Part shown: positions 4,997 to 64,000 of the stretch, one piece after another
Layout: every line of letters begins with the position of its first letter
How positions within the stretch are numbered: the stretch's first letter is position 1
Source of the DNA: Paraphysomonas bandaiensis
Lineage: Eukaryota > Protista > Chrysophyceae
Direction: 5' to 3'
DNA length: 64,000 nt
Assembly (NCBI GenBank): GCA_965644295.1
Contig: CBFFRP010000319.1
Coordinates: 115,610-179,609, forward strand
Made by a program: the position numbers and the translations under genes
The notes under the pieces: model-generated
Databases searched by the model: none
What the model saw: only the letters and a program-made list of their open reading frames with translations
Told to the model about the DNA's origin: nothing

Positions 4997-5510
4997 TCTA
5001 TATATGGGTGTTAAGGGGGTTGTATGAGGTGTGTGTTGGTTAATAGCATCACATGGCTGTACACTACAAGCAAGTACCTCATTGAGAACACATATAGAAG
5101 GTATACACACTACCATACTACGGTACCATACTATCATATAGTGCTGCTGTATATGTATGTACGTATGTACAGTTCTGTGTCCAGAGTACTCCGTATGGAA
5201 TACTGTGCATAATTATACTGCTGTATATCACTGTATTTTGAGTCTATTATCCACCCATCATTTCTGATGCTAAACGTGTGGTCCACAGGAGCTTCCACAG
5301 CACTCACTCGACATATCAAAACAAACTATTATCATTATTAAACCAGAGTGTCTTGTAGAAATCACACTGCAAGATATTCAAATGAAAGGCTCATGTTGGA
5401 AGAAGCATTGAACCTCAATGGCCTGAGCGTGTCATGAATCGATGATGGAAATCTCAGCAAGGTAACTGAACGATTATTTACTATATATACAATGACACTG
5501 GCATCACATC

Positions 5511-17467: not shown

Positions 17468-17472
17468 GGAAA

Positions 17473-17546
17473 TGCTCAATCGGGGGCTCGAACCCAGGAC
17501 CTTAGGTTTATTAGACCTACGCTCTGACCAACTGAGCTAATCGAGC
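17473..17546 (-). tRNA. tRNA-Ile, anticodon AAT
   Basis: GCTCGATTAGCTCAGTTGGTCAGAGCGTAGGTCT-AAT-AAACCTAAGGTCCTGGGTTCGAGCCCCCGATTGAGCA folds as a cloverleaf with TAGGT/ACCTA anticodon stem, D-arm and GTTCGA T-loop. Confidence 0.95.
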
Positions 17547-17813
17547 ACTTGATGATAACACTAAATAGAATAGGTAATATAATAGAATTACATTTATATT
17601 GTTTAACAGTTAAGAAAAACGAATTAAAGAAAGTTAAAGCATGACATCCAATCATATTCAAGTAAAGTCTAATAGAAGAAAACATGTGGTATGAAGAGTT
17701 TCTATATAGACGCAAGAGGTATGCATTCACCAGATTTTGAGAGACTCTGATTAGACCTGGAATGAAAGACAAAAACATAAGAGTCAGTAGAAGTTACTTT
17801 AATAGGAAGTAAC

Positions 17814-32269: not shown

Positions 32270-35200
32270 TCAAAGAAGAACTGTTGGAAGAGATGTTGGG
32301 GACAGCGTCACAGATGGCGCTTGAGATGGGTAGGCTGTTAAGGTTCCCACATATCCATGACATAGTACACATGTCGCGGGTCCTGTGCCCTTCCCAATTA
32401 TCAACACCGATACTCTCTCACCCGTTGCATGGATCGTCTCCTCGTCCAAACATTGGTCTTCTTGAGTTATCATATTCAACCCCGTTGTACTCACAGAAAA
32501 TGCTCGTAAACCCGTACTATCAGATAAACTCGTTGATGTAGTCACCGTACCAAATACGCCCGGTGATGAAACGTACTCATTGGCAAAATCAATATGTAAT
32601 AAGTCATTAGTTACACCTGTGAATTGATGAGTCTCAAACGTCCACCCCTCCGCACATGTCACTGATGACCCAAACTCAAATGTCATATACGAAAGTGTCT
32701 CAGGCTCCAACATCACATAGTAACTTGGATCAGCAGAGTCGTGGGGCTGAAGTACATACTTACCGAAACGCCTCGCGATGTTAAATCCACGAGGGATCAA
32801 TAAACGGTCATACACTACAGTCTGAAGCTGAAGTATCACACCCACATCAACATCAATGTCATATGTACACAAAGCATCCGGTGACTCGCAACCACTCGGA
32901 TAATTGATCCGAACAAAATTGTCGCGATTCGTTACATCACCATCCTGCCGTGTTATTGGACCACTACCGACAAAAAAGTAATGACCCGACAGCTCATAAG
33001 CACCGTGCTCAGCAACTAACCAAGACAAGTGCAATGGTGGAGATATCACCGTCGGTACAGTCCACTCCTTCGAACAGAAACTGTCATTTGCCTGATACAA
33101 ACGTACTTCAAATGACACCCGACCAGAAAACACTTCCACATTGCGAACACGAGCTATTGCGGGATACCCCTCATCAGATGTATCTCCGGGTATGTCAGGA
33201 AGACTCACAAACACACTCGCGTCATCAAATGACGACAATGTTGTACTCAGTGACACCCACACTTGGTCATCCACATCCACAGATCCGATCTCCAACCATT
33301 CAGATGAAAGCATTGTATCAGATATTACATCCACTATTTCCTCATCCACACCGTCATCACAGGCATCAGTAACTGGTAGTGTCGGTAGCACCGTAGGAAT
33401 GACGGATGGTAAAGCGCTAGGAATATTCGTAGGCATAACTGTGGGACACCTGGATGGAATAACAGTTGGGATCACTGTAGGTGTCACAGATGGAGATACA
33501 GAAGGAAGCTGTGTGGGACATGCCGTCGGACTCGATGTGGGAGTCTTGCTTGGGGAAGGTGTTGGGCTCAATACAACTGGAGATGATGCAGGCGAGAGAG
33601 TGGGGCGTGAAGTCGGGGATCGGGTTGGGTCAGATGTTGGTACCTCTGTTGGAATAGGAGTAGGAGAGACTGTTGGAAGAGATGTTGGGGACAGCGTCAC
33701 AGATGGCGCTTGAGATGGGTAGGCTGTTAAGGTTCCCACATATCCATGACATAGTACACATGTCGCGGGACCTGTGCCCTTCCCAATTATCAACACCGAT
33801 ACTCTCTCACCAGTTGCATGGATCGTCTCCTCGTCCAAACATTGGTCTTCTTGAGTTATCATATTCAACCCCGTTGTACTCACAGAAAATACTCGTAAAC
33901 CCGTACTATCAGATAAACTCGTTGATGTAGTCACCGTACCAAATACGCCCGGTGATGAAACATACTCATTGGCAAAATCAATATGTAATAAGTCATTAGT
34001 TACACCTGTGAATTGATGAGTCTCAAACGTCCACCCCTCCGCACATGTCACTGATGACCCAAACTCAAATGTCATATACGAAAGTGTCTCAGGCTCCAAC
34101 ATCACATAGTAACTTGGATCAGCAGAGTCGTGGGGCTGAAGTACATACTTACCGAAACGCCTCGCGATGTTAAATCCACGAGGGATCAATAAACGGTCAT
34201 ACACTACAGTCTGAAGCTGAAGTATCACACCCACATCAACATCAATGTCATATGTACACAAAGCATCCGGTGACTCGCAACCACTCGGATAATTGATCCG
34301 AACAAAATTGTCGCGATTCGTTACATCACCATCCTGCCGTGTTATTGGACCACTACCGACAAAAAAGTAATGACCCGACAGCTCATAAGCACCATGCTCA
34401 GCAACTAACCAAGACAAGTGCAATGGTGGAGATATCACCGTCGGTACAGTCCACTCCTTCGAACAGAAACTATCATTTGCCTGATACAAACGTACTTCAA
34501 ATGACACCCGACCAGAAAACACTTCCACATTGCGAACACGAGCTATTGCGGGATACCCCTCATCAGATGTATCTCCGGGTATGTCAGGAAGACTCACAAA
34601 CACACTCGCGTCATCAAATGACGACAATGTTGTACTCAGTGACACCCACATTTGGTCATCCACATCCACAGATCCGATCTCCAACCATTCAGATGAAAGC
34701 ATTGTATCAGATATTACATCCACTATTTCCTCATCCACACCGTCATCACAGGCATCAGTAACTGGTAGTGTCGGTAGCACCGTAGGAATGACGGATGGTA
34801 AAGCGCTAGGAATATTCGTAGGCATAACTGTGGGACACCTGGATGGAATAACAGTTGGGGTCACTGTAGGCTTCACAGATGGAGGTACAGAAGGAAGTTG
34901 TGTGGGACATGCCGTCGGACTCGACGTGGGAGTCCTGCTTGGGGAAGGTGTTGGGCTCAATACAACTGGAGATGATGCAGGCGAGAGAGTGGGGCGTGAA
35001 GTCGGGGATCGGGTTGGGTCAGATGTTGGTACCTCTGTTGGAAAAGGAGTAGGAGAGACTGTTGGAAGAGATGTTGGGGACAGCGTCACAGATGGCGCTT
35101 GAGATGGGTAGGCTGTTAAGGTTCCCACATATCCATGACATAATACACATGTCGCGGGACCTGTGCCCTTCCCAATTATCAACACCGATACTCTCTCACC

Positions 35201-38200
35201 AGTTGCATGGATCGTCTCCTCGTCCAAACATTGGTCTTCTTGAGTTATCATATTCAACCCCGTTGTACTCACAGAAAATACTCGTAAACCCGTACTATCA
35301 GATAAACTCGTTGATGTAGTCACCGTACCAAATACGCCCGGTGATGAAACATACTCATTGGCAAAATCAATATGTAATAAGTCATTAGTTACACCTGTGA
35401 ATTGATGAGTCTCAAATGTCCACCCCTCCGCACATGTCACTGATGACCCAAACTCAAATGTCATATACGAAAGTGTCTCAGGCTCCAACATCACATAGTA
35501 ACTTGGATCAGCAGAGTCGTGGGGCTGAAGTACATACTTACCGAAACGCCTCGCGATGTTAAATCCACGAGGGATCAATAAACGGTCATACACTACAGTC
35601 TGAAGCTGAAGTATCACACCCACATCAACATCAATGTCATATGCACACAAAGCATCCGGTGACTCGCAACCACTCGGATAATTGATCCGAACAAAATTGT
35701 CGCGATTCGTTACATCACCATCCTGCCGTGTTATTGGACCACTACCGACAAAAAAGTAATGACCTGACAGCTCATAAGCACCGTGCTCAGCAACTAACCA
35801 AGACAAGTGCAATGGTGGAGATATCACCGTCGGTACAGTCCACTCCTTCGAACAGAAACTGTCATTTGCCTGATACAAACGCACTTCAAATGACACCCGA
35901 CCAGAAAACACTTCCACATTGCGAACACGAGCTATTGCGGGATATCCCTCATCAGATGTATCTCCGGGTATGTCAGGAAGACTCACAAACACACTCACGT
36001 CATCAAATGACGACAATGTTGTACTCAGTGACACCCACATTTGGTCATCCACATCCACAGATCCGATCTCCAACCATTCAGATGAAAGCATAGTGTCAGA
36101 TATTACATCCACTATTTCCTCATCCACACCGTCATCACAGGCATCAGTAACTGGTAGTGTCGGTAGCACCGTAGGAATGACGGATGGTAAAGCGCTAGGA
36201 ATATTCGTAGGCATAACTGTGGGACACCTGGATGGAATAACAGTTGGGGTCACTGTAGGCTTCACAGATGGAGGTACAGAAGGAAGTTGTGTGGGACATG
36301 CCGTCGGACTCGACGTGGGAGTCCTGCTTGGGGAAGGTGTTGGGCTCAATACAACTGGAGATGATGCAGGCGAGAGAGTGGGGCGTGAAGTCGGGGATCG
36401 GGTTGGGTCAGATGTTGGTACCTCTGTTGGAATAGGAGTAGGAGAGACTGTTGGAAGAGATGTTGGGGACAGCGTCACAGATGGCGCTTGAGATGGGTAG
36501 GCTGTTAAGGTTCCCACATATCCATGACATAGTACACATGTCGCGGGACCTGTGCCCTTCCCAATTATCAACACCGATACTCTCTCACCAGTTGCATGGA
36601 TCGTCTCCTCGTCCAAACATTGGTCTTCTTGAGTTATCATATTCAACCCCGTTGTACTCACAGAAAATACTCGTAAACCCGTACTATCAGATAAACTCGT
36701 TGATGTAGTTACCGTACCAAATACGCCCGGTGATGAAACATACTCATTGGCAAAATCAATATGTAATAAGTCATTAGTTACACCTGTGAATTGATGAGTC
36801 TCAAACGTCCACCCCTCCGCACATGTCACTGATGACCCAAACTCAAATGTCATATACGAAAGTGTCTCAGGCTCCAACATCACATAGTAACTTGGATCAG
36901 CAGAGTCGTGGGGCTGAAGTACATACTTACCAAAACGCCTCGCGATGTTAAATCCACGAGGGATCAATAAACGGTCATACACTACAGTCTGAAGCTGAAG
37001 TATCACACCCACATCAACATCAATGTCATATGCACACAAAGCATCCGGTGACTCGCAACCACTCGGATAATTGATCCGAACAAAATTGTCGCGATTCGTT
37101 ACATCACCATCCTGCCGTGTTATTGGACCACTACCGACAAAAAAGTAATGACCCGACAGCTCATAAGCACCGTGCTCAGCAACTAACCAAGACAAGTGCA
37201 ATGGTGGAGATATCACCGTCGGTACAGTCCACTCCTTCGAACAGAAACTATCATTTGCCTGATACAAACGTACTTCAAATGACACCCGACCAGAAAACAC
37301 TTCCACATTGCGAACACGAGCTATTGCGGGATATCCCTCATCAGATGTATCTCCGGGTATGTCAGGAAGACTCACAAACACACTCGCGTCATCAAATGAC
37401 GACAATGTTGTACTCAGTGACACCCACATTTGGTCATCCACATCCACAGATCCGATCTCCAACCATTCAGACGAAAGCATTGTATCAGATATTACATCCA
37501 CTATTTCCTCATCCACGCCGTCATCACAGGCATCAGTAACTGGTAGTGTCGGTAGCACCGTAGGAATGACGGATGGTAAAGCGCTAGGAATATTCGTAGG
37601 CATAACTGTGGGACACCTGGATGGAATAACAGTTGGGATCACTGTAGGTGTCACAGATGGAGGTACAGAAGGAAGTTGTGTGGGACATGCCGTCGGACTC
37701 GACGTGGGAGTCCTGCTTGGGGAAGGTGTTGGGCTCAATACAACTGGAGATGATGCAGGCGAGAGAGTGGGGCGTGAAGTCGGGGATCGGGTTGGGTCAG
37801 ATGTTGGTACCTCTGTTGGAAAAGGAGTAGGAGAGACTGTTGGAAGAGATGTTGGGGACAGCGTCACAGATGGCGCTTGAGATGGGTAGGCTGTTAAGGT
37901 TCCCACATATCCATGACATAATACACATGTCGCGGGACCTGTGCCCTTCCCAATTATCAACACCGATACTCTCTCACCAGTTGCATGGATCGTCTCCTCG
38001 TCCAAACATTGGTCTTCTTGAGTTATCATATTCAACCCCGTTGTACTCACAGAAAATACTCGTAAACCCGTACTATCAGATAAACTCGTTGATGTAGTCA
38101 CCGTACCAAATACGCCCGGTGATGAAACATACTCATTGGCAAAATCAATATGTAATAAGTCATTAGTTACACCTGTGAATTGATGAGTCTCAAACGTCCA

Positions 38201-41200
38201 CCCCTCCGCACATGTCACTGATGACCCAAACTCAAATGTCATATACGAAAGTGTCTCAGGCTCCAACATCACATAGTAACTTGGATCAGCAGAGTCGTGG
38301 GGCTGAAGTACATACTTACCGAAACGCCTCGCGATGTTAAATCCACGAGGGATCAATAAACGGTCATACACTACAGTCTGAAGCTGAAGTATCACACCCA
38401 CATCAACATCAATGTCATATGTACACAAAGCATCCGATGACTCGCAACCACTCGGATAATTGATCCGAACAAAATTGTCGCGATTCGTTACATCACCATC
38501 CTGCCGTGTTATTGGACCACTACCGACAAAAAAGTAATGACCCGACAGCTCATAAGCACCATGCTCAGCAACTAACCAAGACAAGTGCAATGGTGGAGAT
38601 ATCACCGTCGGTACAGTCCACTCCTTCGAACAGAAACTATCATTTGCCTGATACAAACGTACTTCAAATGACACCCGACCAGAAAACACTTCCACATTGC
38701 GAACACGAGCTATTGCGGGATACCCCTCATCAGATGTATCTCCGGGTATGTCAGGAAGACTCACAAACACACTCGCGTCATCAAATGACGATAATGTTGT
38801 ACTCAGTGACACCCACACTTGGTCATCCACATCCACAGATCCGATCTCCAACCATTCAGATGAAAGCATAGTGTCAGATATTACATCCACTATCTCCACA
38901 TCATGTGCATTATTACATATAGTCGTGGGTTCAGCCGATGGAGTAGTCGGATTTAACGTTGGTGGAATAGTCTGAAGTTGTGTTAGTGGGTAACTTGGTG
39001 ACGTAGACGGTACTGACGATGGAGCAGGTGTTGGAGATGAAGTAGGAAAGAGAGTAGGTAAAGAAGTCGGGTTTATACTAGGACCCGTTGTAGGATTTGA
39101 AGTGGACGGGCCAAACGTTGGATAGAAAGACGGAAACGCAGTCGGATTTCCAGAGGGCGTAACAATAGAAGGTTCAGACGAAACAGGAGATAGACTAGGA
39201 CTCTCGGACACCTTCGTCGACAACATACCATAACATAATACACATGTCGCGGGTCTTGTGCCCTTCCCAATTATCAACACCGATACTCTTTCACCCGTTG
39301 CATGGATCGTCTCCTCGTCCAAACATTGGTCTTCTTGAGTTATCATATTCAACCCCGTTGTACTCACAGAAAATACTCGTAAACCCGTACTATCAGATAA
39401 ACTCGTTGATGTAGTTACCGTACCAAATACGCCCGGTGATGAAACATACTCATTGGCAAAATCAATATGTAATAAGTCATTAGTTACACCTGTGAATTGA
39501 TGAGTCTCAAACGTCCACCCCTCCGCACATGTCACTGATGACCCAAACTCAAATGTCATATACGAAAGTGTCTCAGGCTCCAACATCACATAGTAACTTG
39601 GATCAGCAGAGTCGTGGGGCTGAAGTACATACTTACCGAAACGCCTCGCGATGTTAAATCCACGAGGGATCAATAAACGGTCATACACTACAGTCTGAAG
39701 CTGAAGTATCACACCCACATCAACATCAATGTCATATGCACACAAAGCATCCGATGACTCGCAACCACTCGGATAATTGATCCGAACAAAATTGTCGCGA
39801 TTCGTTACATCACCATCCTGCCGTGTTATTGGACCACTACCAACAAAAAAGTAATGACCCGACAGCTCATAAGCACCATGCTCAGCAACTAACCAAGACA
39901 AGTGCAATGGTGGAGATATCACCGTCGGTACAGTCCACTCCTTCGAACAGAAACTGTCATTTGCCTGATACAAACGTACTTCAAATGACACCCGACCAGA
40001 AAACACTTCCACATTGCGAACACGAGCTATTGCGGGATATCCCTCATCAGATGTATCTCCGGGTATGTCAGGAAGACTCACAAACACACTCGCATTGTAA
40101 AAGATGGTTTGTTTTGTTGAAAGTGCTAGCCATACTTCATCGTTAACTTCAGCAAATCCTATTTCTAACCAACTATTCGATAGAGCTCTTTTTGTAATAT
40201 AGTTTCTCATCTCCGTGTCAACGCCATTGTGACATATAGTAGTCGGATTCGAAGTGGGTTGTGTTGGCACAAAGGTGGGAAATAATGTCGGAATCGCTGT
40301 AGGGTCTACAGATGGGATTGATGTTGGTAAGGAAGTAGGCATTGCAGTCGGTTTCGCAATCGGCACATTCGTTGGCACACACGATGGATACGACGATGGA
40401 TTGAAGGAAGGAACTGCACTGGGCTCTTCGGACGGAACACATGTCGGCTTCGACGACGGGACAAACGTAGGAAAAGCAACCGGTAATGAACTTGGAACCC
40501 CGGTCGGTATAGTTGGAATGCCACTAGGAAGATAGGATGGCTTACTCGTGGTAGGGATATGAGTTGGGAGAGTAGTTGGATTACTACTGGGGTCAACAGA
40601 AGGAAAGCAACTCGGAATCTCAGTTGGGCCACTTGACGGAACATACGACGGGACTGATGATGGTTCACCCGATGGATTCAACGTCGGATATACAGTGGGA
40701 AGTGATGTCGGTACACCTGAAGGATTACATGAAGGCACATCCGTCGGAATATACGAAGGTTGAGAGGATGGTGCATTACTCGGTGTACCCGTAGGATACA
40801 ATGATGGCTGAGCACTTGGTAACGAAGAAGGCAAACAAGATGGGACAGCAGTTGGTTCACTTGACGGAACATACGACGGGACTGATGATGGTTCACCCGA
40901 TGGATTCAACGTCGGATATAAAGTGGGAAGTGATGTCGGTACACCTGAAGGATTACATGAAGGCACATCCGTCGGAATATACGATGGTTGAGAGGATGGT
41001 GCATTACTCGGTGTACCCGTAGGATACAATGATGGCTGAGCACTTGGTAACGAAGAAGGCAAACAAGATGGGACAGCAGTTGGTTCACTTGACGGAACAT
41101 ACGACGGGACTGATGATGGTTCACCCGATGGATTCAACGTCGGATATAAAGTGGGAAGTGATGTCGGTACACCTGAAGGATTACATGAAGGCACATCCGT

Positions 41201-49459: not shown

Positions 49460-50020
49460 ATATATAAATCACTGATAAATACAGTGATAACAATAATCTG
49501 CTACAATAGAGTTGAAGCAATAATGATTATAAGTCATGAATATTATCCTTAATTACTATCATCTACTCTGGTTTAGTCTTATCTATTGCTCATTACGCTG
49601 CATACTATAGCTATGTATGTACTATATCATGTGCTCTGTACATGTATGTGACCAATCATATTATTGGAGGTGTGGACTTCATTGCCTCGACTTCATCTTT
49701 CATAATTGAAAGTCGAAATTTTGGTATAAAACCTCAGAGAAATTTTATCCAATGAAATCATAGAAATAACTAATCATTTGATAAGGTGTGATGCCAGGAC
49801 AGTAGTGTGTACATAGTGTACGGCTATACATACCCCTGACCTGTTCTATATACATCGTGTACGTACCTATATCTAGATATACATATATATGAGGGAGATT
49901 TCATCCCATCTCCATTGTTACAAATGACCACAACAACTCATGACAGATATATATAACCAAAAACAATATTGATGACAGAATTATGTTATCTTTTATATCA
50001 GTATTGATTATACATGATAT
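49460..50020. promoter_or_regulatory. Candidate bidirectional promoter between the two giant genes
   Basis: 561-bp AT-rich gap between divergent ATGs. CCAAT-like (49652, 49749), ATTGG (49663) and TATA-like tracts are present, but the individual motifs are weak evidence. Confidence 0.5.
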
Positions 50021-53000: not shown

Positions 53001-56000
53001 GCGATGGATGGTGTGATTATGAAGAAAAGAACACAGCAGAGTGTGATTGGGACGGAGGTGATTGTTGTGAAGAGACTTGTGTGTCTCGTGGTTATGAGTG
53101 CGGAAGTAATGGTTTTTTCCAATGCAAGGATCCTGCCGTAATTGGGTCAAGTAGCCCGACGATCGCTCCGTCTGATCAGCCCACAGCAGATCCAACGACT
53201 TCACAGCCTACTACTTCATATACCCCACCTCCAACCTGTAATATCGAGGCTATCGACTTGATTGGCGATGGATGGTGTGATTATGAAGAAAAGAATACAG
53301 CAGAGTGTGATTGGGACGGAGGTGATTGTTGTGAAGAGACTTGTGTGTCTCGTGGTTATGAGTGCGGAAGTAATGGTTTTTTCCAATGCAAGGATCCTGC
53401 CGTAATTGGGTCAAGTAGTCCGACGATCGCTCCATCAGACCGGCCTTCTGTACTGCCAACGACTTCACAGCCTACCACTCCATATACCCCACCTCCAACC
53501 TGTAATATCGAGGCTATTGACTTGATTGGCGATGGATGGTGTGATTATGAAGAAAAGAATACAGCAGAGTGTGATTGGGACGGAGGTGATTGTTGTGAAG
53601 AGACTTGTGTGTCTCGTGGTTATGAGTGCGGAAGTAATGGTTTTTTCCAATGCAAGGATCCTGCCGTAATTGGGTCAAGTAGTCCGACGATCGCACCATC
53701 AGGCCGGCCTACATTTGATCAATCAGTGAATCCAACTGTGATTCCTACACAGTCTCCCACATCACAACCAACTGATGTTCCATCATTGGAGCCCACGAAG
53801 AGTCCAACTTCAAGCCCAACGCAAGTTCCAACACGTACACCGTCGTTGTCACCAACGCACTTTCCAACTGGTGGTCCAACTGGGGCTCCTACGAATCATC
53901 CTACTATGTTTCCAACAGTGGGTCCAACAGTAGGTCCAACATCTGTACCTAGTTTTTCTCCTTCAGTTTTTCCTACGATGAATCCATCGGTAAATCCAAC
54001 TGTGATTCCTACACAGCCTCCCACATCACAACCAACTGATGTTCCATCATTGGAGCCCACGAAGAGTCCAACTTCAAGCCCAACGCAAGTTCCAACACAT
54101 GCACCGTCGTTGTCACCAACGCACTTTCCAACTGGTGGTCCAACTGGGGCTCCTACGAATCATCCTACTATGTTTCCAACAGTGGGTCCAACAGTGGGTC
54201 CAACATCTGTACCTAGTTTTTCTCCTTCAGTTTTTCCTACGATGAATCCATCGGTAAATCCAACTGTGATTCCTACACAGCCTCCCACATCACAACCAAC
54301 TGATGTTCCATCATTGGAGCCCACGAAGAGTCCAACTTCAAGCCCAACGCAAGTTCCAACACGTGCACCGTCGTTGTCACCAACGCACTTTCCAACTGGT
54401 GGTCCAACTGCCGAGCCCACATTTTCTCCGTCTTCTATCCCAAGTTATGGACCGACACATTCGTTCGCACCCTCTTTTTCGGTGTGTTTTGATGGAGTTG
54501 ACGATGAAATTATCGATGTTGTTGTTGATGGATCATTGAAAAACGATTGGTTGGAGATCGGATCTGTGGATGTGGATGACCAAGTGTGGGTGTCACTGAG
54601 TACAACATTGTCGTCATTTGATGACGCGAGTGTGTTTGTGAGTCTTCCTGACATACCCGGAGATACATCTGATGAGGGGTATCCCGCAATAGCTCGTGTT
54701 CGCAATGTGGAAGTGTTTTCTGGTCGGGTGTCATTTGAAGTGCGTTTGTATCAGGCAAATGATAGTTTCTGTTCGAAGGAGTGGACTGTACCGACGGTGA
54801 TATCTCCACCATTGCACTTGTCTTGGTTAGTTGCTGAGCACGGTGCTTATGAGCTGTCGGGTCATTACTTTTTTGTCGGTAGTGGTCCAATAACACGGCA
54901 GGATGGTGATGTAACGAATCGCGACAATTTTGTTCGGATCAATTATCCGAGTGGTTGCGAGTCACCGGATGCTTTGTGTGCATATGACATTGATGTTGAT
55001 GTGGGTGTGATACTTCAGCTTCAGACTGTAGTGTATGACCGTTTATTGATCCCTCGTGGATTTAACATCGCGAGGCGTTTTGGTAAGTATGTACTTCAGC
55101 CCCACGACTCTGCTGATCCAAGTTACTATGTGATGTTGGAGCCTGAGACACTTTCGTATATGACTTTTGAGTTTGGGTCATCAGTGACATGTGCGGAGGG
55201 GTGGACGTTTGAGACTCATCAATTCACAGGTGTAACTAATGACTTATTACATATTGATTTTGCCAATGAGTATGTTTCATCACCGGGCGTATTTGGCGTA
55301 GTTGGTTCCTCTACAAGTTTGACGGATGGTACTGGTTTGCGCGCTTTTTCTGTCACCAGTACTGGTGTGAATATAATAACTCAAGAAGACCAATGTTTGG
55401 ACGAGGAGACGATCCATGCAACTGGCGAGACAGTCTACGTCTTTGTAATTGGTAAGAGTAAAGAACCCTTAGAATGTGTATTGTGTCGAGGTTATGCTGG
55501 CACATTGACTTCGAGTCCAACACTTATCCCGTCGACATCCCCGGCTATCCCATCTTCCACACCAACGCGATATCCGACATCTGTACCTAGTTCTTCTCCT
55601 TCGGTTTTTCCTACGATGAATCCATCGGTAAATCCAACTGTGATTCCTACACAGCCTCCCACATCACAACCAACTGATGTTCCATCATTGGAGCCCACGA
55701 AGAGTCCAACTTCAAGCCCAACGCAAGTTCCAACACGTGCACCGTCGTTGTCACCAACGCACTTTCCAACTGGTGGTCCAACTGGGGCTCCTACGAATCA
55801 TCCTACTATTTTTCCAACAGAGGGTCCAACATCTGTACCTAGTTTTTCTCCTTCAGTTTTTCCTACGATGAATCCATCGGTAAATCCAACTGTGATTCCT
55901 ACACAGCCTCCCACATCACAACCAACTGATGTTCCATCATTGGAGCCTACGAAGAGTCCAACTTCAAGCCCAACGCAAGTTCCAACACGTGCACCGTCGT

Positions 56001-59000
56001 TGTCACCAACGCACTTTCCAACTGGTGGTCCAACTGGGGCTCCTACAAATCATCCTACCATGTTTCCAACAGTGGGTCCAACAGTAGGTCCAACATCTGT
56101 ACCTAGTTTTTCTCCTTCAGTTTTTCCTACGATGAATCCATCGGTAAATCCAACTGTGATTCCTACACAGCCTCCCACATCACATCCAACTGATGCTCCA
56201 TCATTGGAGCCCACGAAGAGTCCAACTTCAAGCCCAACGCAAGTTCCAACACATGCACCGTCGTTGTCACCTACGATGAATCCATCGGTGAATCCAACTG
56301 TGATTCCTACACAGTCTCCCACATCACAACCAACTGATGTTCCATCATTGGAGCCCACGAAGAGTCCAACTTCAAGCCCAACGCAAGTTCCAACACGTAC
56401 ACCGTCGTTGTCACCAACGCACTTTCCAACTGGTGGTCCAACTGGGGCTCCTACGAATCATCCTACTATGTTTCCAACAGTGGGTCCAACAGTGGGTCCA
56501 ACATCTGTACCTAGTTTTTCTCCTTCAGCTTTTCCTACGATGAATCCATCGGTGAATCCAACAGTGGAACCCATGCAGCCCATTTTGAGCCCAACCGTAT
56601 GTCCCACACAACTTCCTTCTGTACCTCCATCTGTGAAGCCTACAGTGACCCCAACTGTTATTCCATCCAGGTGTCCCACAGTTATGCCTACGAATATTCC
56701 TAGCGCTTTACCATCCGTCATTCCTACGGTGCTACCGACACTACCAGTTACTGATGCCTGTGATGACGGTGTGGATGAGGAAATAGTGGATGTAATATCT
56801 GATACAATGCTTTCATCTGAGTGGTTGGAGATCGGATCTGTGGATGTGGATGACCAAGTGTGGGTGTCACTGAGTACAACATTGTCGTCATTTGATGATG
56901 CGAGTGTGTTTGTGAGTCTTCCTGACATACCCGGAGATACATCTGATGAGGGGTATCCCGCAATAGCTCGTGTTCGCAATGTGGAAGTGTTTTCTGGTCG
57001 GGTGTCATTTGAAGTGCGTTTGTATCAGGCAAATGATAGTTTTTGTTCGAAGGAGTGGACTGTACCGACGGTGATATCTCCACCATTGCACTTGTCTTGG
57101 TTAGTTGCTGAGCACGGTGCTTATGAGCTGTCGGGTCATTACTTTTTTGTCGGTAGTGGTCCAATAACACGGCAGGATGGTGATGTAACGAATCGCGACA
57201 ATTTTGTTCGGATCAATTATCCGAGTGGTTGCGAGTCACCGGATGCTTTGTGTGCATATGACATTGATGTTGATGTGGGTGTGATACTTCAGCTTCAGAC
57301 TGTAGTGTATGACCGTTTATTGATCCCTCGTGGATTTAACATCGCGAGGCGTTTTGGTAAGTATGTACTTCAGCCCCACGACTCTGCTGATCCAAGTTAC
57401 TATGTGATGTTGGAGCCTGAGACACTTTCGTATATGACTTTTGAGTTTGGGTCATCAGTGACATGTGCGGAGGGGTGGACGTTTGAGACTCATCAATTCA
57501 CAGGTGTAACTAATGACTTATTACATATTGATTTTGCCAATGAGTATGTTTCATCACCGGGCGTATTTGGTACGGTGACTACGTCAACAAGTTTATCTGA
57601 TAGTACAGGTTTACGAGTATTTTCTGTGAGTACAACGGGGTTGAATATGATAACTCAAGAAGACCAATGTTTGGACGAGGAGACGATCCATGCAACTGGT
57701 GAGAGAGTATCGGTATTGGTAATTGGGAAGGGGACAGGACCCGCGACATGTGTATTATGTCATGGATATGTGGGAACCTTAACAGCCTACCCATCTCAAG
57801 CGCCATCTGTGACGCTGTCCCCAACATCTCTTCCTACAGTCTCTCTTACTCCTATTCCAACAGAGGTACCAACATCTGACCCAACCCTATCCCCGACTTC
57901 ACGTCCCACTCTCTCGCCTGCATCATCTCCAGTTGTATTGAGCCCAACACCTTCCCCAAGCAGGACTCCCACGTCGAGTCCGACGGCATGTCCCACACAG
58001 CTTCCTTCTGTATCTCCATCTGTGACACCTACAGTGACCCCAACTGTTATTCCATCCAGGTGTCCCACAGTTATGCCTACGAATATTCCTAGCGCTTTAC
58101 CATCCGTCATTCCTACGGTGCTACCGACACTACCAGTTACTGATGCCTGTGATGACGGTGTGGATGAGGAAATAGTGGATGTAATATCTGATACAATGCT
58201 TTCATCTGAGTGGTTGGAGATCGGATCTGTGGATGTGGATGACCAAGTGTGGGTGTCACTGAGTACAACATTGTCGTCATTTGATGATGCGAGTGTGTTT
58301 GTGAGTCTTCCTGACATACCCGGAGATACATCTGATGAGGGGTATCCCGCAATAGCTCGTGTTCGCAATGTGGAAGTGTTTTCTGGTCGGGTGTCATTTG
58401 AAGTGCGTTTGTATCAGGCAAATGATAGTTTTTGTTCGAAGGAGTGGACTGTACCGACGGTGATATCTCCACCATTGCACTTGTCTTGGTTAGTTGCTGA
58501 GCACGGTGCTTATGAGCTGTCGGGTCATTACTTTTTTGTCGGTAGTGGTCCAATAACACGGCAGGATGGTGATGTAACGAATCGCGACAATTTTGTTCGG
58601 ATCAATTATCCGAGTGGTTGCGAGTCACCGGATGCTTTGTGTGCATATGACATTGATGTTGATGTGGGTGTGATACTTCAGCTTCAGACTGTAGTGTATG
58701 ACCGTTTATTGATCCCTCGTGGATTTAACATCGCGAGGCGTTTTGGTAAGTATGTACTTCAGCCCCACGACTCTGCTGATCCAAGTTACTATGTGATGTT
58801 GGAGCCTGAGACACTTTCGTATATGACTTTTGAGTTTGGGTCATCAGTGACATGTGCGGAGGGGTGGACGTTTGAGACTCATCAATTCGCAGGTGTAACT
58901 AATGACTTATTACATATTGATTTTGCCAATGAGTATGTTTCATCACCGGGCGTATTTGGTACGGTGACTACGTCAACAAGTTTATCTGATAGTACAGGTT

Positions 59001-62000
59001 TACGAGTATTTTCTGTGAGTACAACGGGGTTGAATATGATAACTCAAGAAGACCAATGTTTGGACGAGGAGACGATCCATGCAACTGGTGAGAGAGTATC
59101 GGTATTGGTAATTGGGAAGGGGACAGGACCCGCGACATGTGTATTATGTCATGGATATGTGGGAACCTTAACAGCCTACCCATCTCAAGCGCCATCTGTG
59201 ACGCTGTCCCCAACATCTCTTCCTACAGTCTCTCTTACTCCTATTCCAACAGAGGTACCAACATCTGACCCAACCCTATCCCCGACTTCACGTCCCACTC
59301 TCTCGCCTGCATCATCTCCAGTTGTATTGAGCCCAACACCTTCCCCAAGCAGGACTCCCACGTCGAGTCCGACGGCATGTCCCACACAGCTTCCTTCTGT
59401 ATCTCCATCTGTGACACCTACAGTGACCCCAACTGTTATTCCATCCAGGTGTCCCACAGTTATGCCTACGAATATTCCTAGCGCTTTACCATCCGTCATT
59501 CCTACGGTGCTACCGACACTACCAGTTACTGATGCCTGTGATGACGGTGTGGATGAGGAAATAGTGGATGTAATATCTGATACAATGCTTTCATCTGAAT
59601 GGTTGGAGATCGGATCTGTGGATGTGGATGACCAAGTGTGGGTGTCACTGAGTACAACATTGTCGTCATTTGATGACGCGAGTGTGTTTGTGAGTCTTCC
59701 TGACATACCCGGAGATACATCTGATGAGGGGTATCCCGCAATAGCTCGTGTTCGCAATGTGGAAGTGTTTTCTGGTCGGGTGTCATTTGAAGTGCGTTTG
59801 TATCAGGCAAATGATAGTTTCTGTTCGAAGGAGTGGACTGTACCGACGGTGATATCTCCACCATTGCACTTGTCTTGGTTAGTTGCTGAGCATGGTGCTT
59901 ATGAGCTGTCGGGTCATTACTTTTTTGTCGGTAGTGGTCCAATAACACGGCAGGATGGTGATGTAACGAATCGCGACAATTTTGTTCGGATCAATTATCC
60001 GAGTGGTTGCGAGTCACCGGATGCTTTGTGTGCATATGACATTGATGTTGATGTGGGTGTGATACTTCAGCTTCAGACTGTAGTGTATGACCGTTTATTG
60101 ATCCCTCGTGGATTTAACATCGCGAGGCGTTTTGGTAAGTATGTACTTCAGCCCCACGACTCTGCTGATCCAAGTTACTATGTGATGTTGGAGCCTGAGA
60201 CACTTTCGTATATGACTTTTGAGTTTGGGTCATCAGTGACATGTGCGGAGGGGTGGACGTTTGAGACTCATCAATTCGCAGGTGTAACTAATGACTTATT
60301 ACATATTGATTTTGCCAATGAGTATGTTTCATCACCGGGCGTATTTGGTACGGTGACTACGTCAACAAGTTTATCTGATAGTACAGGTTTACGAGTATTT
60401 TCTGTGAGTACAACGGGGTTGAATATGATAACTCAAGAAGACCAATGTTTGGACGAGGAGACGATCCATGCAACTGGTGAGAGAGTATCGGTATTGGTAA
60501 TTGGGAAGGGCACAGGACCCGCGACATGTGTATTATGTCATGGATATGTGGGAACCTTAACAGCCTACCCATCTCAAGCGCCATCTGTGACGCTGTCCCC
60601 AACATCTCTTCCTACAGTCTCTCTTACTCCTATTCCAACAGAGGTACCAACATCTGACCCAACCCTATCCCCGACTTCACGTCCCACTCTCTCGCCTGCA
60701 TCATCTCCAGTTGTATTGAGCCCAACACCTTCCCCAAGCAGGACTCCCACGTCGAGTCCGACGGCATGTCCCACACAGCTTCCTTCTGTACCTCCATCTG
60801 TGAAGCCTACAGTGACCCCAACTGTTATTCCATCCAGGTGTCCCACAGTTATGCCTACGAATATTCCTAGCGCTTTACCATCCGTCATTCCTACGGTGCT
60901 ACCGACACTACCAGTTACTGATGCCTGTGATGACGGTGTGGATGAGGAAATAGTGGATGTAATATCTGATACAATGCTTTCATCTGAATGGTTGGAGATC
61001 GGATCTGTGGATGTGGATGACCAAGTGTGGGTGTCACTGAGTACAACATTGTCGTCATTTGATGACGCGAGTGTGTTTGTGAGTCTTCCTGACATACCCG
61101 GAGATACATCTGATGAGGGATATCCTGCAATAGCTCGTGTTCGCAATGTGGAAGTGTTTTCTGGTCGGGTGTCATTTGAAGTGCGTTTGTATCAGGCAAA
61201 TGACAGTTTCTGTTCGAAGGAGTGGACTGTACCGACGGTGATATCTCCACCATTGCACTTGTCTTGGTTAGTTGCTGAGCATGGTGCTTATGAGCTGTCG
61301 GGTCATTACTTTTTTGTCGGTAGTGGTCCAATAACACGGCAGGATGGTGATGTAACGAATCGCGACAATTTTGTTCGGATCAATTATCCGAGTGGTTGCG
61401 AGTCACCGGATGCTTTGTGTGCATATGACATTGATGTTGATGTGGGTGTGATACTTCAGCTTCAGACTGTAGTGTATGACCGTTTATTGATCCCTCGTGG
61501 ATTTAACATCGCGAGGCGTTTTGGTAAGTATGTACTTCAGCCCCACGACTCTGCTGATCCAAGTTACTATGTGATGTTGGAGCCTGAGACACTTTCGTAT
61601 ATGACTTTTGAGTTTGGGTCATCAGTGACATGTGCGGAGGGGTGGACGTTTGAGACTCATCAATTCACAGGTGTAACTAATGACTTATTACATATTGATT
61701 TTGCCAATGAGTATGTTTCATCACCGGGCGTATTTGGTACGGTGACTACGTCAACAAGTTTATCTGATAGTACAGGTTTACGAGTATTTTCTGTGAGTAC
61801 AACGGGGTTGAATATGATAACTCAAGAAGACCAATGTTTGGACGAGGAGACGATCCATGCAACTGGTGAGAGAGTATCGGTATTGGTAATTGGGAAGGGC
61901 ACAGGACCCGCGACATGTGTATTATGTCATGGATATGTGGGAACCTTAACAGCCTACCCATCTCAAGCGCCATCTGTGACGCTGTCCCCAACATCTCTTC

Positions 62001-64000
62001 CTACAGTCTCTCTTACTCCTATTCCAACAGAGGTACCAACATCTGACCCAACCCTATCCCCGACTTCACGTCCCACTCTCTCGCCTGCATCATCTCCAGT
62101 TGTATTGAGCCCAACAGCTTCCCCAAGCAGGACTCCCACGTCGAGTCCGACGGCATGTCCCACACAGCTTCCTTCTGTACCTCCATCTGTGACACCTACA
62201 GTGACCCCAACTGTTATTCCATCCAGGTGTCCCACAGTTATGCCTACGAATATTCCTAGCGCTTTACCATCCGTCATTCCTACGGTGCTACCGACACTAC
62301 CAGTTACTGATGCCTGTGATGACGGTGTGGATGAGGAAATAGTGGATGTAATATCTGATACAATGCTTTCATCTGAATGGTTGGAGATCGGATCTGTGGA
62401 TGTGGATGACCAAGTGTGGGTGTCACTGAGTACAACATTGTCGTCATTTGATGACGCGAGTGTGTTTGTGAGTCTTCCTGACATACCCGGAGATACATCT
62501 GATGAGGGGTATCCCGCAATAGCTCGTGTTCGCAATGTGGAAGTGTTTTCTGGTCGGGTGTCATTTGAAGTGCGTTTGTATCAGGCAAATGATAGTTTCT
62601 GTTCGAAGGAGTGGACTGTACCGACGGTGATATCTCCACCATTGCACTTGTCTTGGTTAGTTGCTGAGCACGGTGCTTATGAGCTGTCGGGTCATTACTT
62701 TTTTGTCGGTAGTGGTCCAATAACACGGCAGGATGGTGATGTAACGAATCGCGACAATTTTGTTCGGATCAATTATCCGAGTGGTTGCGAGTCACCGGAT
62801 GCTTTGTGTGCATATGACATTGATGTTGATGTGGGTGTGATACTTCAGCTTCAGACTGTAGTGTATGACCGTTTATTGATCCCTCGTGGATTTAACATCG
62901 CGAGGCGTTTTGGTAAGTATGTACTTCAGCCCCACGACTCTGCTGATCCAAGTTACTATGTGATGTTGGAGCCTGAGACACTTTCGTATATGACTTTTGA
63001 GTTTGGGTCATCAGTGACATGTGCGGAGGGGTGGACGTTTGAGACTCATCAATTCACAGGTGTAACTAATGACTTATTACATATTGATTTTGCCAATGAG
63101 TATGTTTCATCACCGGGCGTATTTGGTACGGTGACTACGTCAACAAGTTTATCTGATAGTACAGGTTTACGAGTATTTTCTGTGAGTACAACGGGGTTGA
63201 ATATGATAACTCAAGAAGACCAATGTTTGGACGAGGAGACGATCCATGCAACTGGTGAGAGAGTATCGGTATTGGTAATTGGGAAGGGGACAGGACCCGC
63301 GACATGTGTATTATGTCATGGATATGTGGGAACCTTAACAGCCTACCCATCTCAAGCGCCATCTGTGACGCTGTCCCCAACATCTCTTCCTACAGTCTCT
63401 CTTACTCCTATTCCAACAGAGGTACCAACATCTGACCCAACCCTATCCCCGACTTCACGTCCCACTCTCTCGCCTGCATCATCTCCAGTTGTATTGAGCC
63501 CAACACCTTCCCCAAGCAGGACTCCCACGTCGAGTCCGACGGCATGTCCCACACAGCTTCCTTCTGTATCTCCATCTGTGACACCTACAGTGACCCCAAC
63601 TGTTATTCCATCCAGGTGTCCCACAGTTATGCCTACAGAATATTCCTAGCGCTTTACCATCCGTCATTCCTACGGTGCTACCGACACTACCAGTTACTGA
63701 TGCCTGTGATGACGGTGTGGATGAGGAAATAGTGGATGTAATATCTGATACAATGCTTTCATCTGAATGGTTGGAGATCGGATCTGTGGATGTGGATGAC
63801 CAAGTGTGGGTGTCACTGAGTACAACATTGTCGTCATTTGATGACGCGAGTGTGTTTGTGAGTCTTCCTGACATACCCGGAGATACATCTGATGAGGGGT
63901 ATCCCGCAATAGCTCGTGTTCGCAATGTGGAAGTGTTTTCTGGTCGGGTGTCATTTGAAGTGCGTTTGTATCAGGCAAATGATAGTTTCTGTTCGAAGGA
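50021..64000 (+). CDS. Giant secreted subtilisin (S8, KP-43/Tag-like) fused to 5 LNR-like repeats, Pro/Thr stalks and at least 7 copies of the ~330-aa domain; intron 51054-51113; apparent +1 frameshift at 63637; repeat continues off window
   Basis: Signal peptide MTPLMLTLLLLLCCIAIRG and a pro-region. A 60-nt GT-AG intron splits the catalytic Asp (GIA-D-TG). HGTHVCGT, FAAGN, SGTSMATP and QGFGRV follow, then a KP-43-type C-domain (LKVTIVWMDP..DIDL..NNVE). Confidence 0.92.
52420..53715 (+). repeat. Five tandem LNR-like repeats, near-identical inverted copies of 48060-49330
   Basis: Same peptide unit and shared linkers (SEIQPTADPT, DQPTADPTTSQ, DRPSVLPTTSQ, SGRPT) as the minus-strand gene. Confidence 0.95.
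53720..56565 (+). repeat. Pro/Thr/Ser stalk repeats (~264-bp unit with HFPTGGPTGAPTNHP) on both sides of the first domain copy (~54480-55500)
   Basis: Unit NPTVIPTQxPTSQPTDVPSLEPTKSPTSS... repeats at 53725, 53989, 54253 and across 55620-56560. It is absent from the minus-strand gene. Confidence 0.92.
56595..64000 (+). repeat. Coding tandem array, 1389-bp period, inverted near-identical counterpart of 32281-38895
   Basis: Shadow ORFs at 56748, 58137, 59526, 60915 and 62304 (1389 spacing) translate almost identically to those of the left array. Confidence 0.97.

What the first reader, a model, noticed from the sequence alone, without database searches (positions are those of the whole stretch)
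32270..64000. Head-to-head pair of giant secreted modular proteins, one with a subtilisin and one without: candidate undescribed protease-adhesin surface system
Seen: two divergent genes 561 bp apart, each with a signal peptide, share the order LNR-like x5, then Pro/Ser/Thr stalk, then tandem ~330-aa domains, with near-identical DNA in shared modules. Only the + gene has a pro-domain and complete S8 catalytic residues (D, H, N, S). Established: LNR repeats are Ca-binding modules that gate proteolysis in Notch and determine substrate specificity in pappalysins, and KP-43/Tag subtilases are secreted proteases. Inference: the two are co-expressed and form a long multivalent extracellular assembly (prey capture and digestion, or lorica, scale or cyst matrix). 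The protease would sit on a stalk, and the partner may be a scaffold, decoy or substrate. I do not recognise this architecture from any characterised family.
Basis: partly seen in the sequence, partly recalled or inferred. Interest (0 to 1): 0.92.

Follow-up and report, generated by a model that had tools for sequence, protein, structure and literature searches.

The report
Paired giant stalked proteins, new domain
Two huge neighbouring genes of a protist (probably a golden-alga-like stramenopile) encode secreted head–stalk–array proteins, one tipped with a working-looking protease, whose repeated 335-residue module belongs to an unnamed domain family that looks lectin-like and carries different heads in other organisms.

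Summary
Gene A (32270-49459, minus strand, 5729 aa) and gene B (50021 onward, plus strand, one 60-nt intron) start 561 bp apart. Both encode a signal peptide, five LNR-like units, a Pro/Thr/Ser stalk and six copies of a 335-aa module, sharing 6.6 kb of inverted DNA at 98.2% identity. Only B carries a KP-43-type subtilase with D/H/N/S; its Asp codon is formed by splicing.

Corrections: A has seven LNR units. B's stop at 63647 comes from one extra base at 63637, and an intact seventh module continues to the window end.

The 335-aa module has no Pfam or PDB sequence match. It defines an unnamed family of 233 clusters, including Paraphysomonas transcripts. The AlphaFold model is confident (pLDDT 95) and all-beta. 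Its first subdomain resembles H-type lectins best, though weakly.

Elsewhere the same stalk-plus-array carries other heads (two proteinase-K-type subtilases, or a Kelch propeller). Single copies sit at the outer tip of REJ and LRR membrane receptors. No other locus shows the head-to-head pairing.

Best reading: recently duplicated, gene-converted paralogues of a modular family in which a multivalent, probably glycan-binding, array tethers variable heads. A dedicated two-gene protease-partner system is not supported.

The parts
32270..49459 (-). Gene A: one ORF of 5729 aa. Order: signal peptide, 5 LNR-like units, long PT stalk holding 2 more LNR units, then 6 x 335-aa module. It ends in a PT linker with no transmembrane or anchor-like tail.
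48035..49337 (-). Gene A LNR-like array: 5 units with a 264-nt period.
   Evidence: Pfam Notch/LNR 56 bits, E 5.4e-15 on the whole array. TRF period 264. 95.7% identical to the array of B.
40238..48034 (-). Gene A Pro/Thr/Ser stalk: 76-aa (228-nt) repeats with two Cys each. Extra LNR units lie at 44870-45126 and 42581-42837.
   Evidence: Pfam PT repeat E 1.1e-41. TRF. LNR unit 20.2 bits. blastn.
32360..40237 (-). Gene A array of six 335-aa modules separated by ~128-aa PT linkers: A1 39233-40237, A2 37916-38920, A3 36527-37531, A4 35138-36142, A5 33749-34753, A6 32360-33364.
49460..50020 (.). 561-bp AT-rich divergent intergenic region between the two start codons. It may act as a shared promoter region; this was not tested.
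50021..51053 (+). Gene B exon 1: signal peptide and a long N-terminal pro-region. It ends with the first base of the catalytic Asp codon.
   Evidence: The pro-region is homologous to the N-terminus of a stand-alone S8 relative, P0159 (E 4e-12). It has no Pfam hit.
51054..51113 (+). 60-nt GT-AG intron. Splicing gives GIA-D-TGVD.
51114..52421 (+). KP-43-type subtilase (S8) catalytic domain plus C-terminal beta-barrel. H396 at 51266, N494 at 51560, S575 at 51803.
   Evidence: Pfam PF00082 E 2.4e-35. PDB 1wmd E 4e-43 over query residues 44-412..
52422..53734 (+). Gene B LNR-like array: 5 units.
   Evidence: Pfam Notch 51.8 bits. TRF period 264.
53735..63316 (+). Gene B PT stalks (88-aa repeats) and six 335-aa modules: B1 54482-55486, B2 56756-57760, B3 58145-59149, B4 59534-60538, B5 60923-61927, B6 62312-63316.
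63637..63649 (+). One extra base (A at 63637) compared with all other units. It shifts the frame and gives the TAG at 63647-63649.
63650..64000 (+). Continuation of the repeat in another frame: linker plus the start of a 7th module from 63702. It is 100% identical to units 3 and 5 and is cut by the window end.

Best explanation
A and B are recently duplicated, inverted paralogues that gene conversion keeps alike. They belong to a lineage-restricted, undescribed family of giant secreted head-stalk-array glycoproteins of a stramenopile-like protist.

Shown:
- Each protein has a signal peptide, an N-terminal head, a long Pro/Thr/Ser stalk and a C-terminal tandem array of a 335-aa all-beta module. 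In A the head is LNR-like units only. In B it is a pro-region, a KP-43-type subtilase with an intact D/H/N/S set, and LNR-like units.
- Neither protein has a membrane anchor.
- The module is under purifying selection in both genes.
- In other organisms the same stalk and array carry different heads.
- Single modules form the outermost part of REJ/PKD-type and LRR-type membrane receptors.

Inferred:
- The module consists of three H-type-lectin-like beta-sandwiches in one chain and binds a polymeric ligand, most likely a glycan.
- Six or more copies give a high-avidity tether.
- The tether fixes the protein by its C-terminal end to the cell's own coat or matrix, or less likely to a foreign glycan surface.
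- The O-glycosylated stalk then holds the head hundreds of nanometres away.
- B thus works as a tethered extracellular protease, like a bacterial cell-envelope proteinase. A is a protease-less fibril displaying Ca-binding LNR units.
- The head-to-head arrangement is a by-product of the duplication. The shared 561-bp region may still give common regulation.
For: - Architecture and catalytic residues.
- No transmembrane segment in A or B, while typical family members have one.
- Module copies are 99.1-99.9% identical within B and 98.6-99.3% within A, but about 98.2% between genes. The first copies have diverged to 87-92%.
- Synonymous differences outnumber nonsynonymous ones in the module, 12-17 against 3-9 per 335 codons.
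- The family exists elsewhere, with 233 clusters of which 73 have E<1e-30. It is expressed in Paraphysomonas (MMETSP1103).
- Heads vary. L002 has two S8 domains followed by six modules, present twice in tandem. L022 has a Kelch propeller followed by five modules.
- Single modules lie N-terminal to REJ or LRR regions followed by TM segments.
- Fold: the whole-module model has pLDDT 95.2. Local matches to H-type lectin domains and to phage and pyocin receptor-binding tips have probability 1.00. For subdomain 1 the five best PDB matches are all H-type lectins.
- An independent metagenome contig carries a unit at 98.8% identity.
- The logic of a triple-motif binding module anchoring variable heads is established for C. 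difficile CWB2 proteins: PMC4973711.
Against: - The lectin assignment is weak. Foldseek E-values are 0.12-0.3 and TM-scores 0.43-0.51. Pfam H_lectin was hit by only 1 of 51 members, at E 0.064.
- The three-fold internal repeat is not statistically secure (P 0.001 to 0.08). Only subdomain 1 was modelled on its own.
- No ligand, localisation or expression data exist.
- In the membrane receptors of the family the module points outward. That fits sensing foreign ligands at least as well as self-anchoring.
- Head variability was seen in contigs of only one other assembly (ERZ25071330).
- B carries a frameshift, so its true 3' end is unknown and it could be decaying.
Confidence: 0.5

Rival explanations
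1. One reading: A and B form a dedicated two-gene system. They are co-expressed from the shared 561-bp region, and A acts as scaffold, decoy or substrate of the B protease in one multivalent extracellular assembly.
For: - Divergent starts 561 bp apart.
- Identical LNR and module sets could allow hetero-association or a shared target.
- Both genes are under purifying selection.
Against: - The pairing is not seen in any related locus with readable flanks. L002 has two protease-bearing paralogues in tandem on one strand. L022, L001, L019-L021, L023, L025 and L026 show no partner.
- The 98% DNA identity is explained by recent duplication and conversion.
- The signal peptides and stalks are unrelated, so the pair is not an ancient co-evolved unit.
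Confidence: 0.2
2. Targeting rather than anchoring: the proteins are released. The module array works like the carbohydrate-binding modules of secreted enzymes, or like a phage tail-fibre tip. It binds foreign glycan surfaces such as bacterial prey or particles, and so delivers the protease (B) or agglutinates the target (A).
For: - No anchor sequence.
- Catalytic head, PT linker and binding module is the classic layout of secreted polysaccharide-degrading enzymes (established knowledge).
- Fold matches include phage receptor-binding proteins and pyocin fibres that bind bacterial surfaces.
- Relatives occur in the bacterivore Paraphysomonas.
- In the receptors of the family the module faces outward.
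Against: - Stalks of about 2600 aa (A) are hard to justify for a freely diffusing enzyme. They are typical of anchored surface fibrils.
- There are no binding data.
- The lifestyle of the window's organism is unknown.
Confidence: 0.2
3. Artefact or decaying locus: the inverted near-identical arrays are a mis-assembly of one repeat-rich gene, or B is a pseudogene.
For: - The frameshift at 63637.
- 1389-bp tandem units above 99% identical are hard to assemble.
- Copy numbers cannot be verified without reads.
Against: - The heads, signal peptides and stalk repeat types are unique to each gene.
- There are gene-specific fixed differences with a strong synonymous excess.
- Both long ORFs are otherwise intact over 17 kb and 12.5 kb.
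- The 358 nt after the frameshift are identical to other units, which points to a very recent change or a base-calling error.
- An independent metagenome contig confirms the unit.
Confidence: 0.08

Closest known systems
KP-43 oxidatively stable alkaline subtilase of Bacillus (PDB 1wmd) and SubHal (5fax); eukaryotic 'Tag'-type subtilases
   Same: The B protease aligns over the catalytic domain and the C-terminal beta-barrel, E 4e-43. It has the same D/H/N/S motifs. Its closest named relative is annotated tagC (49% identity).
   Different: B has a ~300-aa pro-region shared only with protist relatives. It is fused to LNR-like units, PT stalks and six or more modules. No protein of 2300-7300 aa with this combination was found.
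LNR modules of Notch and pappalysin-1 (Pfam PF00066)
   Same: The GDGxCD...N...C-DWDGGDC core with the acidic/Asn Ca-binding positions is present. The arrays score 52-56 bits. As in pappalysins, the units sit next to a protease.
   Different: Single units score 18-20 bits, below the 21.2-bit cut-off. One canonical Cys is replaced (CDYEEKN). Each unit has a 4-Cys extension. There is no PDB sequence match, no Notch-type negative regulatory region, and the fold was not tested.
H-type lectins (Helix pomatia/aspersa agglutinin, coral SLL-2; Pfam PF09458) and phage/pyocin fibre tips
   Same: For subdomain 1 of the module the five best PDB fold matches are all H-type lectins, followed by R-type pyocin fibres. 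The whole module matches viral H-type lectin and receptor-binding domains locally.
   Different: There is no significant sequence match, and E-values and TM-scores are weak. Known H-type lectins are ~100-aa chains that form homotrimers (my knowledge). Here three different sandwiches appear to lie in one 335-aa chain. The sugar-binding residues could not be mapped.
Clostridioides difficile cell-wall proteins with three CWB2 motifs (e.g. SlpA, Cwp2); PMC4973711
   Same: The working logic is the same: a constant triple-repeat binding module non-covalently tethers proteins with many different functional heads to a surface polysaccharide.
   Different: The fold, kingdom and scale are unrelated. This is an analogy only. 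No ligand is known here.
Bacterial cell-envelope proteinases (lactococcal PrtP, streptococcal C5a peptidase) and fungal or mucin-type stalked adhesins
   Same: An S8 protease or binding head is held away from the cell on a long spacer whose far end is fixed to the wall (established knowledge).
   Different: Those use LPXTG or GPI covalent anchors. Here there is no anchor signal, and anchoring by the module array is inferred.
Polycystin-1 / sea-urchin REJ receptors
   Same: Family members P0004, P0013, P0025 and P0068 carry the module at the N-terminal tip, upstream of REJ domains and TM segments. Animal REJ proteins carry C-type lectin domains at that position (my knowledge).
   Different: A and B themselves have no REJ domain and no TM segment.

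Membership tests
Peptidase S8 (subtilases) | Pfam PF00082 match above the gathering score | tested here: met
   122.7 bits against a 21.8-bit cut-off, E 2.4e-35
Peptidase S8 (subtilases) | Catalytic Asp-His-Ser in that order, plus the oxyanion Asn, in canonical motifs | tested here: met
   D345 in GIADTG (needs the 60-nt intron removed), H396 in GHGTH, N494 in AAGN, S575 in GTSMATP
KP-43-type subtilase subgroup | Homology extends through the extra C-terminal beta-barrel domain of KP-43 | tested here: met
   1wmd aligned 62-418 to query 44-412, E 4e-43
KP-43-type subtilase subgroup | Proteolytic activity and pro-peptide processing | not testable with these tools
   Needs expression and an assay
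LNR domain (PF00066) | Pfam score above the gathering cut-off | tested here: inconclusive
   Single units score 18.4 and 20.2 bits, below 21.2. Five-unit arrays score 56 and 51.8 bits.
LNR domain (PF00066) | Six conserved cysteines (three disulfides) in the ~36-aa core | tested here: not met
   Direct reading. The core reads C...GDGWCDYEEKNTAECDWDGGDC. The Cys of the canonical 'CDxxCN' is absent, and four further Cys follow in an extension.
LNR domain (PF00066) | Ca-coordinating Asp/Asn positions (D..N...DxDGGD) | tested here: met
   Present in all 12 units by direct reading. Ca binding itself was not tested.
H-type lectin (PF09458) | Sequence match to the family profile | tested here: not met
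   No hit for the window module. One of 51 family members hit at E 0.064.
H-type lectin (PF09458) | Six-stranded beta-sandwich fold superposable on HPA or SLL-2 | tested here: inconclusive
   Subdomain 1 model has pLDDT 87.8. The top 5 PDB hits are 4q56, 2cgy, 3wmp, 2ccv and 2ce6, with E 0.12-0.31, TMt 0.42-0.51 and probability 0.60-0.93. Subdomains 2 and 3 were not modelled alone.
H-type lectin (PF09458) | Trimeric arrangement and GalNAc binding | not testable with these tools
Needs a structure and a glycan array.
PT disordered repeat (PF04886) | Pfam match above the cut-off | tested here: met
   140.5 bits (A stalk) and 114.9 bits (B stalk) against 26.2
Conserved two-gene protease/partner system | Head-to-head linkage of a protease-bearing and a protease-less gene in related genomes | tested here: not met
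   Not seen in any of the loci with flanks. L002 has two protease-bearing copies in tandem.

The most novel reading that the evidence does not exclude
The 335-aa module is an undescribed domain family: a single-chain, pseudo-trimeric H-type-lectin-like glycan binder. Chrysophyte-like stramenopiles use it as a general extracellular platform in two ways. Tandem arrays on mucin-like stalks tether swappable heads (KP-43 subtilase plus LNR, proteinase-K-type subtilases, Kelch propeller). Single copies act as the sensing tip of PKD/REJ-type and LRR-type receptors. The window pair would then be a natural experiment: the same tether with and without a protease.
Probability: 0.35. Interest if true: 0.65.

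Novelty: new variant of a known kind. Interest (0 to 1): 0.5.

Why it matters
Little is known at the molecular level about the surface and matrix proteins of heterotrophic and mixotrophic stramenopile flagellates, which are major bacterivores.

This locus gives three things:
- A confidently foldable domain family with no Pfam name or solved relative. It is found in metagenomes (including TARA samples) and in Paraphysomonas transcripts.
- Evidence that the domain is reused both in giant head-stalk-array proteins and at the tip of PKD/REJ-like receptors.
- A rare eukaryotic fusion of a KP-43-type subtilase with LNR-like units.

If the module binds glycans, it would be a new lectin type. It would also be a handle on prey recognition, on attachment of the cell coat or scales, and on tethered extracellular proteolysis in these protists.

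The locus is not evidence for a new two-gene system.

Tried and rejected
- Pfam on the module and on all 51 aligned family members found nothing significant.
- PDB sequence searches with the whole-module and subdomain profiles, and with the LNR array, found nothing.
- Foldseek of the whole module against PDB gave no hit below E 1e-3. The best TM-scores were 0.27-0.36, to the PCSK9 C-terminal domain.
- The internal three-fold repeat tested by hhalign was suggestive only.
With 12 sequences it returned only 1-3 kb metagenome contigs, useless for context, and nothing in viral contigs.
- A search for giant proteins with a KP-43-type S8 domain found only unrelated bacterial-type architectures.
- Scans of 150 family proteins and of all fetched loci for S8 or LNR found only L002.
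- Cluster look-ups for names returned only 'hypothetical protein' and MMETSP transcript tags.
- Literature searches (LNR + subtilisin + diatom; H-type lectin + diatom; Paraphysomonas + lectin; chrysophyte + subtilisin) found no description of this architecture.
- Two tool calls failed on size limits or on frame and were re-sent corrected.
- Pfam 'hits' to TcdB_toxin_midN, CXXC_Zn-b_euk and RpoY on the LNR arrays have no individual significant stretch. They are summation artefacts of the repeats and were rejected.
- The antisense 190-aa ORFs inside the units are by-products of the repeat.
- The organism could not be named.


Full report
**1. Observation**

- The window has few long ORFs in bases 1-32000 and a GC content of about 0.37 there. 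It rises to 0.44-0.48 over the two giant ORFs.
- Gene A is a single ORF on the minus strand, 32270..49459, 5729 aa.
- Gene B starts at 50021. A 360-aa ORF ends at 51103 and a 4172-aa ORF follows in another frame.
- Reading the DNA shows a 60-nt GT-AG intron at 51054..51113. Removing it joins G|AT into an Asp codon and gives GVVVGIADTGVDELSCFF, the canonical subtilase Asp motif.
- Motif mapping gives the following layouts:
  - A: signal peptide, five LNR-like units, a very long Pro/Thr/Ser stalk with two further LNR-like units (aa 1449 and 2212), then six 335-aa modules.
  - B: signal peptide, a ~300-aa pro-region, an S8 domain, five LNR-like units, stalk, one module, a second stalk, then five more modules.
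- B's N-terminus passes a hydrophobicity scan. A's starts MKDR followed by a 17-residue hydrophobic core. Neither protein has any other TM-like segment.

**2. Shared DNA, and is it real?**

- The two genes share an inverted block of 6631 bp at 98.2% identity (A 38902..32273 against B 56774..63403). It is built from 1389-bp units, each a module plus a ~128-aa linker. The LNR arrays are 95.7% identical.
- Module copies are 99.1-99.9% identical within B (B2-B6) and 98.6-99.3% within A (A3-A6), but about 98.2% between the genes. The first copy of each array has diverged to 87-92%.
- This is the signature of concerted evolution inside each array plus a recent duplication or conversion between arrays. 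It is not a perfect palindromic assembly artefact.
- Between-gene differences in the module are mostly synonymous, 12-17 against 3-9 per 335 codons. Both copies are therefore under purifying selection, and the differences are not sequencing noise.
- A 1647-nt contig from an unrelated ENA metagenome assembly carries one unit at 98.8% identity.
- The signal peptides and the stalk repeat types (76-aa with two Cys in A, 88-aa in B) are unrelated.

**3. The end of B**

- The stop at 63647-63649 is caused by one extra A at 63637. B has CCTACAGAATATT where all other units of A and B have CCTACGAATATT.
- After it, the linker and a seventh module continue in another frame to base 64000. That stretch is 100% identical to the matching part of units 3 and 5.
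- So either this is a base-calling error and B runs off the window, or it is a very recent truncation.
- I read the pieces apart and did not join them.
- A ends naturally in a linker, followed by unique AT-rich sequence.

**4. The known parts**

- Protease.
  - Pfam Peptidase_S8, E 2.4e-35.
  - The best solved relatives are KP-43 (1wmd, E 4e-43) and SubHal, aligned through the C-terminal beta-barrel.
  - H396, N494 and S575 sit in GHGTH, AAGN and GTSMATP.
  - The closest named relatives are a 'tagC' entry filed under Symbiodinium (49%), then Ectocarpus, Guillardia and Blastocystis proteins.
  - The pro-region has no Pfam hit but is homologous to the N-terminus of a stand-alone 765-aa relative (E 4e-12). 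A free protease of this type therefore seems to have been fused to the rest.
- LNR-like units.
  - Single units score 18.4-20.2 bits, below Pfam's 21.2-bit cut-off. The arrays score 56 and 51.8 bits.
  - The Ca-binding D/N positions and DWDGGDC are present.
  - One canonical cysteine is missing, and each unit has a four-Cys extension.
  - 'LNR-like' is the right term.
- Stalks. They give strong PT-repeat matches.

**5. The 335-aa module**

- It has no Pfam hit and no PDB sequence hit, even for a 51-sequence profile at E<=10.
- An exhaustive HMMER search of 1.84 billion representatives found 233 clusters, 73 of them below 1e-30, at 25-56% identity. Several are multi-copy giants.
- None carries a functional name. 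Sources are ENA, JGI and Logan metagenomes, TARA samples and MMETSP.
- Two members are transcripts of MMETSP1103, taxon 36769, which is Paraphysomonas, a chrysophyte. The family is therefore expressed and stramenopile-associated.
- With the 51-sequence alignment, AlphaFold2 gives a very confident all-beta model (pLDDT 95.2, pTM 0.93).
- Foldseek against PDB finds nothing below E 1e-3.
- Against viral models there is one full-length match: an unnamed 784-aa protein, TM 0.64 over 332 columns, E 9e-11. There are also many ~90-136-column local matches with probability 1.00 to 'H-type lectin domain' proteins, gp53-like tail-fibre tips and receptor-binding proteins.
- I then modelled subdomain 1 alone (pLDDT 87.8). 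Its five best PDB matches are Helix aspersa and Helix pomatia agglutinin and the coral lectin SLL-2, followed by R-type pyocin fibres. The scores are weak: E 0.12-0.31, TM 0.42-0.51.
- Three consecutive sandwiches are suggested by three things:
  - the strand pattern;
  - a recurring sequence pattern, F..P.VF ... R ... (ND/HD/ED)(S/Q)x(C/D) ... E.v.(W/Y/L);
  - weak profile-profile similarity of parts 2 and 3 (P 0.001 local, 0.03 global).
- My reading that the module is a single-chain triple H-type-lectin-like unit is an inference of moderate strength, not a demonstrated membership.

**6. Context in relatives**

- Typical family members are signal peptide, one module, about 500 aa, then one TM segment near the C-terminus. 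Alternatively the module is followed by REJ domains and several TM segments, or by LRRs and a TM segment. In all of these the module is the outermost part of a surface receptor.
- L002, a 357-kb contig of assembly ERZ25071330:
  - A 1696-aa ORF with two proteinase-K-type S8 domains (28% identical to B's protease) is followed 15 nt later by a 2763-aa ORF with six modules on PT linkers. This is probably one gene with an intron.
  - A second such paralogue lies 3 kb downstream on the same strand.
- L022: a Kelch propeller head is followed by PT linkers and five modules.
- No LNR units, and no head-to-head protease-less partner, occur in any fetched locus.
- No giant protein with a KP-43-type domain and this layout is in the 5.8-billion-protein collection.
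- The stalk-plus-array is therefore a reusable chassis with exchangeable heads. The exact combination in the window is so far unique.

**7. Mechanism**

- Shown: secreted, anchor-less, head-stalk-array proteins, one with an intact protease; modules under selection; heads exchangeable; module outward-facing in receptors.
- Inferred: the array is a multivalent binder of a polymeric ligand, probably a glycan. It tethers the C-terminal end, and the O-glycosylated stalk projects the head.
- I favour tethering to the cell's own coat or matrix. Stalks of up to about 2600 aa are typical of anchored fibrils. The logic matches CWB2-anchored C. difficile proteins (PMC4973711), cell-envelope proteinases and fungal adhesins.
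- Delivery to foreign surfaces, meaning prey or particles, is a serious rival. Reasons are the phage- and pyocin-tip fold matches and the bacterivorous lifestyle of Paraphysomonas.
It lacks comparative support, and recent inverted duplication accounts for the pairing.

**8. Novelty and score**

- The protease, LNR-like units and PT stalks are known kinds.
- The 335-aa module is an undescribed family with a confident model and no solved relative.
- The chassis-with-heads organisation, and the KP-43 + LNR fusion, have not been described as far as the searches show.
- I rate it a new variant of a known kind (stalked, tethered extracellular proteins) with moderate interest, 0.5.

Noticed in passing
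window 63637-64000: A single extra base ends B's ORF. An intact seventh module, identical to units 3 and 5, continues in another frame, so the gene probably runs off the window.
   Followed up: yes
window 27420-29786 (-): A 788-aa ORF encodes a hybrid histidine kinase (HisKA, HATPase_c, start of a receiver domain). It lies directly downstream of gene A.
   Followed up: partly
window 23742-25468 (-): A DHHC palmitoyltransferase ORF (23742-24932) has an ankyrin-repeat ORF just upstream on the same strand (25031-25468). They are probably exons of one ankyrin-DHHC gene.
   Followed up: no
window 17472-17547 (-): tRNA-Ile with anticodon AAT, the eukaryotic type. It sits next to a protein-kinase fragment ORF at 17814-18299.
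   Followed up: no
window 4223-5137 (-) and 19984-20292 (+): A GST/glutaredoxin-like ORF and an EF-hand ORF. The rest of bases 1-32000 has only short broken ORFs, consistent with intron-rich eukaryotic genes.
   Followed up: no
window 33141-37880 (+) and 56458-62535 (-): Regularly spaced 190-aa (one of 173 aa) antisense ORFs with TTG starts lie inside every 1389-bp unit. They are by-products of the repeat and not genes.
   Followed up: partly
window 40238-48034 (-): A's stalk is made of 76-aa PT repeats with two regularly spaced cysteines each, and of a ~2.3-kb super-repeat that carries an LNR unit twice (44870-45126, 42581-42837). The cysteines could cross-link stalks.
   Followed up: partly
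L002:4896-28292: Two tandem paralogues in another protist assembly (ERZ25071330). Each has two proteinase-K-type S8 domains and EGF-like hits, followed by six modules. This looks like an independent fusion of a different subtilase type to the same array.
   Followed up: partly
L022:1500-10981: A Kelch beta-propeller head sits on PT linkers with five modules.
   Followed up: partly
BFVD entry UPI001E6AE1CA_1: An unnamed 784-aa viral protein model matches the whole 335-aa module (TM 0.64, E 9e-11). A virus may carry the same domain. No relative was found in IMG/VR contigs by sequence.
   Followed up: partly
L024 (ENA ERZ17294013, 1647 nt): A short-read metagenome contig is 98.8% identical to A's repeat unit. 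The source organism or a close relative therefore occurs in that sample.
   Followed up: partly
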